Shown piece after piece: positions 625-41,824 of a stretch of 64,000 bases of DNA (within the stretch, counting starts at the first letter, position 1; each line of letters starts with the position of its first letter). The translations under genes and the position numbers were made by a program. The DNA comes from Octopus bimaculoides (Eukaryota), in assembly GCF_001194135.2 (NCBI RefSeq), contig NC_068984.1:51572831-51636830 (forward strand), written 5' to 3'. The notes under the pieces are model-generated. The model had not been told where the DNA came from. It did no database searches and saw nothing but the letters and a program-made list of their open reading frames with translations.

Positions 625-765
625 CTGATTTAACCGAGAATATTCTTATCACGTTGTCTTTATGATTAGATAAAACGGATTGGTCATCTGATAAGAAGGA
701 GGCTGATTTCACATGAGAGTTCGCTTCAAGGTACTCGTGGTCAACCAGCATACACTGTACATTGC
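625..765 (-). CDS. NWD1: NWD1-like exon 24 (WD40; last supported exon)
   Basis: G-NVQC..HVKSASFLSDDQSVLSNHKDNVIRIFSVKS G|GTAATA; phase 1->1. Confidence 0.85.

Positions 766-41824: not shown

What the first reader, a model, noticed from the sequence alone, without database searches (positions are those of the whole stretch)
625..41824. Candidate membrane-tethered NLR-like signalling receptor: acyl motif - linker - TIR-like - NACHT - WD40
Seen: the full domain order rebuilt from 24 exons, several absent from the ORF track. Known: NACHT+WD40 STAND proteins (NWD1/NWD2, TEP1, fungal HET-E) are ligand-sensing switches that oligomerise, and DUF4062 is grouped with TIR-like folds. Inference: this may be a membrane-anchored invertebrate innate-immune or stress sensor. 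The WD40 exons look far more degenerate than the NACHT core, as expected of a fast-evolving sensor domain.
Basis: partly seen in the sequence, partly recalled or inferred. Interest (0 to 1): 0.7.

Follow-up and report, generated by a model that had tools for sequence, protein, structure and literature searches.

The report
Octopus NWD1 gene with lipid-anchor start
This stretch holds the octopus copy of NWD1, a known family of large switch proteins. The gene is real and already in RefSeq, but the public model lacks the first exon, which carries a probable lipid-anchor signal, and part of exon 8 is lost in an assembly gap.

Summary
On the minus strand, 25 coding exons (41824 down to 625) join in frame with canonical AG/GT sites. 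The protein reads MGCSAS start, about 200 aa disordered linker, DUF4062, NACHT, NWD1-type winged helix, two WD40 propellers.

It is not complete in the window. A 10-N gap (27856-27865) removes the 5' part of exon 8, about 25 codons. The last 62 or more codons lie beyond position 1. All other gaps sit in introns and hide no exon.

The locus is Octopus bimaculoides NWD1 (XP_052823590.1). That model starts at internal Met121, so it lacks exon 1, and it skips 31 residues at the gap.

New here:
- The MG[CS]xx[STAGCN] myristoylation-type start is shared by 66 of 140 family members, plus 13 at a nearby internal Met.
- The catalytic Glu of the TIR-like NADase fold (TEP1 E1008) is kept as E406.
- The NACHT-WD40 part models like Apaf-1.

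"TIR-like" and "STAND switch" are supported. "Membrane-tethered" is a well-supported prediction. "Immune sensor" has no evidence, because studied orthologues act in sensory neurons or at the ER. The WD40 region is the least conserved part, but this is true across the whole family.

The parts
41736..41824 (-). Exon 1: start codon and the first 29.7 codons (MGCSASTITKK...). It is absent from the current RefSeq model.
   Evidence: 100% match to P0005 residues 1-29. GT donor. In-frame TGA 8 codons upstream, with no AG between.
41804..41824 (-). Acyl motif M-G-C-S-A-S-T: Gly2 for myristate, Cys3 for palmitate, Ser6.
   Evidence: Translation checked. The same pattern starts 66 of 140 family members, and 13 more have it at an internal Met. 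The alignment consensus begins MGxxxS.
40133..40716 (-). Exon 2: disordered linker, then the start of the DUF4062/TIR-like domain (KIVRIFTSSTFT at 40134-40169).
   Evidence: pLDDT is below 50 for residues 1-156. The reading frame is open for 91 codons upstream of RefSeq's Met121 (chance about 0.005).
37545..37747 (-). Exon 3: DUF4062 core (ERNYLMEN...DMRWG...STGPNFV).
35011..35126 (-). Exon 4: DUF4062 (TFLSHKYGYRP...).
33175..33386 (-). Exon 5: helical insert of the TIR-like domain.
32902..33030 (-). Exon 6: SVTEAEI motif. The codon of E406, the equivalent of catalytic E1008 of TEP1, is at 33017-33019.
   Evidence: E406 is conserved in at least 90% of 104 sequences.
30605..30730 (-). Exon 7 (EQPNISEEF...VEWRPK). 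It joins exon 6 directly. The two 'exons' that the old model placed between them are repeats.
   Evidence: Phase-1 AG/GT junction. The cuttlefish transcript reads ...KKYRECPNISEDF. The false exons lie in interspersed repeats.
27856..27865 (.). 10-N assembly gap that cuts off the 5' part of exon 8. About 25 codons are missing, of the type GIDPxxxxHxxYLxxLxxDF.
   Evidence: Near-identical direct and inverted duplicates lie next to it.
27722..27855 (-). Exon 8, 3' fragment ((H)LIEKAIYKAN...FFGRNDLLM): the helix before NACHT.
26294..26436 (-). Exon 9: NACHT Walker A, GSSGCGKTS, at 26359-26385.
24413..24515 (-). Exon 10: NACHT (RFLGTT...).
22313..22528 (-). Exon 11: NACHT Walker B, LVLILDSLDQ, at 22436-22465.
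   Evidence: D110 and D113 are invariant.
20941..21271 (-). Exon 12: end of NACHT and helical domain.
19106..19258 (-). Exon 13: NWD1-type winged helix (SESELEDILSCDDEVL...).
17607..17756 (-). Exon 14: winged helix (WYHRQF...).
15836..16052 (-). Exon 15: helical domain.
14377..14533 (-). Exon 16: helical domain.
12747..12918 (-). Exon 17: first WD40 repeat, the one that passes Pfam WD40.
9950..10333 (-). Exon 18: propeller 1.
9042..9272 (-). Exon 19: propeller 1.
8298..8583 (-). Exon 20: end of propeller 1 (...RNLRIWDL).
6002..6116 (-). Exon 21: propeller 2.
4957..5119 (-). Exon 22: propeller 2.
2722..2753 (-). Exon 23: a 32-nt micro-exon (VAYSVLRDLDS). This is the least certain exon.
   Evidence: It is needed for the frame and has AG/GT sites. 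VAYSVLRD aligns to VACLTRGR of homologues, but the next 17 aa or so are absent in octopus.
2031..2325 (-). Exon 24: propeller 2.
625..765 (-). Exon 25: propeller 2. It ends at a GT donor, and the gene continues beyond window position 1.
   Evidence: The remaining 62 residues are not in the window.

Best explanation
This is the Octopus bimaculoides NWD1-family gene. It encodes a protein of about 1,700-1,800 aa built like Apaf-1, but with a TIR-like DUF4062 domain where Apaf-1 has its CARD.

Shown here:
- the exon chain
- the domain order
- intact Walker A and B motifs
- the conserved catalytic-type Glu (E406)
- an Apaf-1-like predicted fold for the NACHT, winged-helix, helical and two-propeller part
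- a conserved MGC start followed by a disordered linker of about 200 aa

Inferred mechanism:
1. Gly2 is myristoylated during translation and Cys3 is palmitoylated. The protein then hangs from the cytoplasmic face of a membrane on a flexible linker.
2. In the resting state the WD40 propellers hold the NACHT module closed.
3. An unknown ligand on the propellers allows nucleotide exchange and ring-like oligomerisation.
4. Oligomerisation brings the TIR-like domains together. [quoted passage not shown]

The biological setting (immunity, sensory transduction or ER homeostasis) is not determined by these data.
For: - Exons, splice sites and frame.
- Pfam domains above their curated cut-offs.
- Family: 357 homologues named NWD1-like or NWD2-like. 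RefSeq XP_052823590.1, named NWD1, is identical over 1,558 residues.
- PDB 11gz (TEP1 TIR-like domain) is hit at E=3.8e-7. E1008 maps to E406, and the numbering was validated on three Arg residues. E406 is at least 90% conserved.
- N-terminal model: residues 200-445 have pLDDT above 90 and an alternating beta-alpha layout. Residues 1-156 are disordered.
- NACHT-WD40 model: pLDDT 83.6, pTM 0.82. The best PDB matches are full-length Apaf-1 (E=1e-30, TM about 0.49 over about 1,275 columns).
- MG motif: starts 66 of 140 family members, with 13 more at an internal Met. It occurs in molluscs, hemichordates and Nematostella.
- The cuttlefish transcript L001 starts MGCTAS four codons after an in-frame stop.
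- Literature: DUF4062 is a TIR-like NADase and an Apaf-1-type activation model has been proposed. NPHP3, another DUF4062 protein, is N-myristoylated. Mouse NWD1 sits on the cytoplasmic face of the ER membrane.
Against: - Full-length human NWD1 and NWD2 showed no NADase activity in vitro. Only TEP1 did.
- Two of the three active-site Arg of TEP1 are not kept: R908 is T224 and R954 is L270. R976 is K298.
- Foldseek with the whole N-terminal model found no significant match in the PDB library used. The TIR-like fold therefore rests on sequence homology to 11gz and on the paper.
- Current RefSeq starts the protein at Met121, without exon 1.
- No octopus transcript was examined.
- Lipidation, oligomerisation and the ligand are all untested.
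Confidence: 0.6

Rival explanations
1. Same protein, but the reader's role applies. It is an innate-immune or stress sensor whose fast-evolving WD40 propellers recognise pathogen or danger ligands.
For: - The architecture is that of STAND immune switches.
- DUF4062 proteins defend bacteria against phage, and TEP1 has been proposed as an immune executioner.
- Molluscs carry several paralogues per species.
- The WD40 region is the least conserved folded part.
Against: - No expression or challenge data exist for this gene.
- The low WD40 identity is family-wide (0.24-0.26 in other pairs, 0.20-0.21 for octopus).
- The three searches returned only models of this same locus from octopus, and no other octopus protein at the thresholds used. 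There is therefore no sign of the lineage expansion typical of immune receptors.
- Studied animal orthologues have non-immune phenotypes.
Confidence: 0.2
2. Same protein, but it acts in sensory or ciliated neurons, like its C. elegans orthologue QUI-1. The lipid anchor would serve for delivery to sensory membranes, as in the UNC119 route used by myristoylated NPHP3.
For: - QUI-1 is called the NWD1 orthologue. It is required in ASH and ADL neurons for quinine and pheromone responses.
- NPHP3, a DUF4062-NACHT relative, is a myristoylated UNC119 cargo sent to cilia.
- Mouse NWD1 is neural (title and abstract of PMC7186558).
Against: - Whether QUI-1 carries the MG motif was not checked here.
- There are no octopus expression data.
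- Orthology between this gene and QUI-1 or NWD1, as opposed to NWD2, was not resolved.
Confidence: 0.25
3. The DUF4062 domain is catalytically silent. The protein is a non-enzymatic scaffold or co-chaperone, as proposed for mouse NWD1 with SERCA2 and with purinosomes.
For: - Human NWD1 and NWD2 were inactive on NAD+ and NADP+.
- Two of the three TEP1 active-site Arg are replaced.
- Mouse NWD1 binds SERCA2 at the ER.
Against: - The catalytic-type Glu and 15 other positions of the domain are invariant or nearly so from cnidarians to molluscs.
- The domain is the most conserved part of the protein, at 62% identity. This argues for a constrained active or binding site.
- Full-length STAND proteins are expected to be auto-inhibited in vitro.
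Confidence: 0.3
4. Exon 1 is not part of this gene. The protein starts at Met121, as in RefSeq, and is cytosolic.
For: XP_052823590.1 starts at MTNEITF, which is Met121 of my model.
Against: - The frame of exon 2 is open for 91 codons upstream of Met121, right from its AG acceptor (chance about 0.005).
- The exon 1 donor and the exon 2 acceptor join in frame.
- The older model UPI0006957E60 uses exon 1.
- Sepia pharaonis CAE1282027.1 and the Logan transcripts start MGCTAS.
- The motif is conserved across phyla.
Confidence: 0.08
5. The gene is broken in octopus. The segment missing at exon 8 is a real deletion, so this is a pseudogene.
For: - The segment is missing in both assemblies' models.
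- One WD blade around exons 23 and 24 is shorter than in homologues.
Against: - The break coincides exactly with a run of N that is flanked by duplicated sequence.
- All 25 exons are open, and all their splice sites that can be read are canonical; the exon 8 acceptor is lost in the gap.
- All invariant family residues are kept.
Confidence: 0.03

Closest known systems
NWD1 (vertebrate NACHT and WD repeat domain-containing protein 1; C. elegans QUI-1)
   Same: It has the same domain order: DUF4062, NACHT, NWD1-type winged helix, WD40 propellers. RefSeq names this very locus NWD1. HTH_NWD1 scores 46 bits.
   Different: The octopus protein, like most non-chordate relatives, has an MGC/MGS start and a disordered linker of 100-240 aa. 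The lamprey and amphioxus sequences I saw lack the motif. Human NWD1 was not examined. Orthology to NWD1 rather than NWD2 is not resolved, because NCBI names alternate among equally close hits.
TEP1 (vault / telomerase protein component 1), TIR-like NADase domain, PDB 11gz
   Same: The DUF4062 domain is homologous (E=3.8e-7), the catalytic Glu is conserved, and NACHT and WD40 follow it.
   Different: There are no TROVE or vWA domains and no link to the vault. Two of the three active-site Arg differ. Activity is untested. TEP1 has no lipid-anchor motif in the sources read.
NPHP3 (nephrocystin-3)
   Same: It has a DUF4062-type domain next to a NACHT-like ATPase, with weak Pfam NPHP3 and NPHP3_N matches here. 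NPHP3 is N-myristoylated and is trafficked by UNC119.
   Different: NPHP3 ends in TPR repeats, not WD40. The Pfam NPHP3 match here is below its cut-off (22.9 against 33 bits).
Apaf-1 (apoptosome)
   Same: It is the best structural match for the NACHT-to-WD40 part: E=1e-30 and TM about 0.49 over the full length. It has two C-terminal propellers and is expected to act as an auto-inhibited switch.
   Different: Apaf-1 has an NB-ARC ATPase rather than NACHT. Sequence identity is 11-12%. Its effector is a CARD rather than a TIR-like domain. It has no lipid anchor.
Bacterial DUF4062 defence proteins (Swarozyc, Evangelion)
   Same: They share the TIR-like DUF4062 core with a catalytic Glu and are activated by assembly.
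   Different: They are short proteins with other sensor parts, lack NACHT-WD40 and defend against phage.
Canonical animal NLRs (NACHT-LRR)
   Same: They share the NACHT ATPase and the STAND logic.
   Different: The sensor is WD40, not LRR. The effector is TIR-like, not CARD or PYD. The protein is therefore 'NLR-like' only in the broad sense.

Membership tests
NWD1/NWD2 family (DUF4062-NACHT-WD40 STAND) | DUF4062 domain on the N-terminal side of the ATPase | tested here: met
   PF13271 scores 26.4 bits against a cut-off of 24.7, residues 216-302.
NWD1/NWD2 family (DUF4062-NACHT-WD40 STAND) | NACHT ATPase with intact Walker A and Walker B | tested here: met
   PF05729 scores 33.4 bits against 26.7. 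GSSGCGKTS and LVLILDSLDQ are present. G24, K25, T26, D110 and D113 are invariant.
NWD1/NWD2 family (DUF4062-NACHT-WD40 STAND) | NWD1-type winged helix-turn-helix after NACHT | tested here: met
   PF25469 scores 46.2 bits against 27.
NWD1/NWD2 family (DUF4062-NACHT-WD40 STAND) | C-terminal WD40 beta-propellers | tested here: met
   PF00400 scores 30.5 bits against 27, and propeller families reach E=1e-17. The model shows about 7 blades plus at least 6 blades. The second propeller is cut by the window and by the annotation end.
NWD1/NWD2 family (DUF4062-NACHT-WD40 STAND) | Orthology to NWD1 rather than NWD2 | not tested
   No vertebrate NWD1 or NWD2 sequences were among the hits listed. The only support is the RefSeq name.
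DUF4062 TIR-like NADases (TEP1, Swarozyc) | Homology to a solved DUF4062/TIR-like domain | tested here: met
   PDB 11gz_A is hit at E=3.8e-7 over residues 3-91 of the domain.
DUF4062 TIR-like NADases (TEP1, Swarozyc) | Catalytic glutamate (TEP1 E1008) | tested here: met
   SVTEMEV aligns to SVTEAEI, so E1008 corresponds to E406. The local second HMMER stretch is weak, but the motif is nearly invariant in the family.
DUF4062 TIR-like NADases (TEP1, Swarozyc) | Active-site arginines R908, R954 and R976 of TEP1 | tested here: not met
   The equivalents are T224, L270 and K298. Only the third is conservatively kept.
DUF4062 TIR-like NADases (TEP1, Swarozyc) | TIR-like three-dimensional fold | tested here: inconclusive
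   The model is confident for residues 200-445 and shows alternating strands and helices. Foldseek with the whole 536-aa model gave no hit at E<0.01. 11gz is not among the hits listed by that search.
DUF4062 TIR-like NADases (TEP1, Swarozyc) | NAD(P)+ hydrolysis | not testable with these tools
   This needs an enzyme assay. Human NWD1 and NWD2 were inactive as full-length proteins.
N-myristoylated, S-palmitoylated proteins (MGC start) | Met-Gly start, allowed residue at position 3, Ser/Thr/Ala/Gly/Cys/Asn at position 6, no Pro at position 7, and Cys3 | tested here: met
   The start is MGCSAST. The motif is conserved in the family.
N-myristoylated, S-palmitoylated proteins (MGC start) | This Met is the true start of translation | tested here: inconclusive
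   The genomic context fits (upstream in-frame stop, no acceptor in between) and the cuttlefish transcript agrees. No octopus transcript was seen, and RefSeq starts at Met121.
N-myristoylated, S-palmitoylated proteins (MGC start) | Lipid actually attached, and membrane localisation | not testable with these tools
   This needs metabolic labelling and imaging.
Canonical NLR (NACHT-LRR) | C-terminal leucine-rich repeats | tested here: not met
   There is no LRR family among the Pfam hits. The C-terminus is WD40.

The most novel reading that the evidence does not exclude
The ancestral, non-chordate form of NWD1 is a dual-lipidated, membrane-resident, Apaf-1-like switch. Its TIR-like domain becomes an NADase when the protein oligomerises on the membrane. 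It would then make ADP-ribose, or deplete NAD+, locally, for example at sensory or ER membranes. Chordates would have lost the anchor. This would give the poorly understood NWD1/QUI-1 family both a place and a chemistry. The current octopus RefSeq model hides the feature because it omits exon 1.
Probability: 0.2. Interest if true: 0.6.

Novelty: already known. Interest (0 to 1): 0.28.

Why it matters
There are three practical points.
1. The public models of this octopus gene are incomplete. The first exon is missing from RefSeq. Thirty-one conserved residues are lost at an assembly gap. Two repeat-derived false exons sit in the older model. The C-terminus is uncertain.
2. A myristoylation/palmitoylation-type start is widely conserved in invertebrate NWD1-like proteins. 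My text search found no paper that discusses the two together.
3. Together with the 2026 finding that DUF4062 is a TIR-like NADase, this gives a testable idea of where and how this family acts.

None of this changes the classification. It is an ordinary member of a known family.

Tried and rejected
- Foldseek of the whole N-terminal model against the PDB gave only weak Rossmann-like hits at E>0.02 and no TIR hit.
The first alignment was too large to submit.
- The look-up of encoding contigs had no record for XP_014771685.1, so I could not read the 3' end of the gene or the newer assembly.
- I looked for a hidden exon between exons 23 and 24, and next to gap 3437-4385. None was found.
- I looked for the last 62 residues in the window. 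They are absent.
- A profile search of the PDB was dominated by WD40 and Apaf-1 hits and added nothing for the TIR-like domain.
- A Pfam scan of ten other open frames in and beyond the gene matched only a Tc1/mariner DDE_3 remnant.
- dN/dS was not attempted. The only cephalopod relative with DNA in hand, L001, is 56% identical at the protein level, so synonymous sites are saturated.
- Rejected: the two exons at 32500-32387 and 30981-30946 of the older model. They lie in interspersed repeats, and neither the cuttlefish transcript nor the homologues have them.

Full report
**What the window is.** The window is AT-rich (37% GC), repeat-rich animal DNA with 14 runs of N. Open frames carrying a P-loop (GSSGCGKTS) and motifs such as RIFTSSTF and DMRWG all lie on the minus strand. 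A draft built from these pieces hit NWD1-like and NWD2-like proteins of molluscs and other invertebrates at E down to 1e-145. It also hit a 536-aa protein, P0005, that maps to the window at 100% identity. A draft of the C-terminal pieces recovered XP_014771685.1 of Octopus bimaculoides (P0121, 1159 aa), again at 100% identity. The window is therefore O. bimaculoides DNA, and the finding covers one gene that older annotation had split in two.

**Exon chain.** I mapped both models exactly and moved each boundary to the nearest AG or GT. Every internal junction is canonical and keeps the frame. Two blocks of the older N-terminal model, 32500-32387 and 30981-30946, are false. Exons 6 and 7 join directly in phase 1, giving ...SSFK-E-QPNISEEF. 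The cuttlefish relative reads ...KKYR-E-CPNISEDF at the same place. Both false blocks fall inside interspersed repeats. Exon 23 (32 nt) is the weakest exon. The frame needs it, and its VAYSVLRD aligns to VACLTRGR of homologues. The next 17 residues or so of that WD blade have no counterpart in octopus, and I found no alternative exon.

**Gaps.** Twelve gaps lie inside the gene.
- Eleven are in introns. In an alignment with 21 full-length homologues, the octopus protein lacks no more than 9 majority columns anywhere, and none at a gap-bearing intron. No exon is hidden there.
- The twelfth gap, the 10-N run at 27856-27865, was not in the list given to me. It touches exon 8 directly.
- Downstream of it the frame reads (H)LIEKAIYKAN. 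Upstream of it the sequence is non-coding.
- Homologues and the intronless cuttlefish transcript L001 place 25 residues there (VDPKANEEHRNYLTELGRDFQYRLQ in L001).
- Near-identical direct and inverted duplicates flank the gaps in this intron, which points to local assembly trouble.
- Continuity and frame across this gap cannot be tested. The phases are compatible: exon 7 ends after codon position 1, and the exon 8 fragment starts at position 2.

At the other end, the last 62 residues of the public model are not in the window. Homologues run about 77 residues further than that model.

**Domains.** Pfam on the spliced protein passes its curated cut-offs for DUF4062, NACHT, HTH_NWD1 and WD40. Many propeller families match below their cut-offs.

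A model of the C-terminal 1159 residues is confident (pLDDT 83.6, pTM 0.82). It shows an ATPase, a helical and winged-helix block, and about 7 plus at least 6 propeller blades. Its best PDB matches are full-length Apaf-1 (E=1e-30, TM about 0.49), ahead of plain WD40 proteins.

A model of the N-terminal 536 residues is disordered for residues 1-156. It is confident (pLDDT above 90) for residues 200-445, with alternating strands and helices.

**TIR-like claim.** The domain hits PDB 11gz, the TEP1 domain, at E=3.8e-7. A 2026 preprint shows that DUF4062 is a TIR-like NADase family. Its bacterial member is Swarozyc and its human member is TEP1, with catalytic E1008. The preprint notes that NWD1, NWD2 and NPHP3 carry the domain next to NACHT, but that these three were inactive as full-length proteins.

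I fixed the chain numbering with R908, R954 and R976. E1008 is then the second Glu of SVTEMEV, which is E406 of SVTEAEI in octopus (codon 33017-33019). E406 is kept in at least 90% of 104 relatives. Two of the three arginines are not kept. Foldseek with the whole N-terminal model found nothing significant, so my own fold test is inconclusive.

**Acyl motif.**
- The protein starts MGCSAST.
- An in-frame TGA lies 8 codons upstream, and no AG lies in between.
- Exon 2 is open for 91 codons upstream of the Met that RefSeq uses (chance about 0.005).
- Among 140 relatives that have a Met start and at least 25 residues before the DUF4062 motif, 66 begin with the myristoylation-type pattern and 29 begin with MGC. 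Another 13 have the pattern at an internal Met within 40 residues, often after MYRxYL.
- The pattern occurs in molluscs, hemichordates and Nematostella.
- Members with short N-termini lack the pattern; so do most other members without a long linker.
- The cuttlefish transcript has a stop four codons before MGCTAS.

A text search for NWD1 together with myristoyl found two unrelated papers, neither about NWD1 lipidation. NPHP3 is a known myristoylated UNC119 cargo. Mouse NWD1 sits on the cytoplasmic face of the ER.

**Conservation by domain.** Median identity of octopus to 21 homologues is:

| Region | Identity |
|---|---|
| Linker | 0.14 |
| DUF4062 | 0.62 |
| Interdomain | 0.37 |
| NACHT | 0.41 |
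| Winged helix and helical | 0.51 |
| WD40 | 0.20-0.21 |

The other pairs in the family show the same gradient, with WD40 at 0.24-0.26. It is not evidence of unusual evolution in octopus.

**What is already known.** The cluster of XP_014771685.1 also holds XP_052823590.1, named 'NACHT domain- and WD repeat-containing protein 1 [Octopus bimaculoides]'. It is 1564 aa and comes from a 148-Mb contig. It equals my residues 121-486 and 518-1709. It starts at Met121, so it lacks exon 1. It jumps from WRPK to AIYKAN through a cryptic AG, so the gap persists in the newer assembly. It also ends differently in the last six residues. The gene and its family are therefore already on record.

**Function.** No data here bear on immunity. 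C. elegans QUI-1, called the NWD1 orthologue, acts in nociceptive chemosensory neurons. Mouse NWD1 acts in neural progenitors and at the ER. The most likely molecular mechanism is an Apaf-1-type switch with a TIR-like effector tethered to a membrane. Which tissue and which ligand are involved remains open.

Noticed in passing
window 27856-27865, with 27919-27998 / 28353-28432 and 28501-28669 / 29601-29770: The 10-N gap that truncates exon 8 was not in the gap list supplied with the finding. Next to it lie a 98.8% inverted duplicate and a 97.6% direct duplicate that border the other gaps of intron 7. This suggests local mis-assembly.
   Followed up: partly
window 21766-22152, 23599-23986, 30919-31291: There are three copies of an interspersed repeat of about 390 bp (89-94% identical) in introns of the gene. 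One copy was called as a coding exon in the older model UPI0006957E60.
   Followed up: partly
window 32244-32527, 46048-46369, 18148-18321, 36727-36899, 37191-37333: This is a second repeat family of about 100-190 bp per copy (79-88% identical). The copy at 32387-32500 is the other false exon of the older model.
   Followed up: partly
window 48565-49158 (+) and 15158-15645: A Tc1/mariner-type transposase remnant (Pfam DDE_3, E=1.9e-8, with one internal stop) lies downstream of the gene. An 89% identical 490-bp piece of the same element lies in intron 15.
   Followed up: partly
homologues P0140, P0142, P0144, P0150, P0156, P0209, P0210 and others: A second recurrent predicted start, MYR[KQE]Y[LM], appears in many molluscan relatives. 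It is often followed 9-15 residues later by the MGS/MGC motif. It could be an alternative first exon or a systematic mis-call of the start codon.
   Followed up: no
hits (for example P0061, P0050 and many ENA, JGI and Logan contigs): Many hits come from metagenome-type contigs. Some carry bacterial labels, such as a Candidatus Thiodiazotropha MAG or 'DnaC'. They match the NACHT, winged-helix and WD40 part at about 40% identity, as close as animal relatives, and mostly without DUF4062.
   Followed up: no
off window; C-terminus of XP_014771685.1 and XP_052823590.1: The two public models end differently (LAYSEE against IRDLSA). Both stop about 77 residues short of the homologues, so the last propeller blade and the acidic tail are probably still unannotated.
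   Followed up: partly
window 42000-64000: I found no second gene beyond the start codon. The region holds microsatellites ((CA)n, (GA)n and others), repeats and transposon fragments. Nine of ten open frames I tested had no Pfam match.
   Followed up: partly
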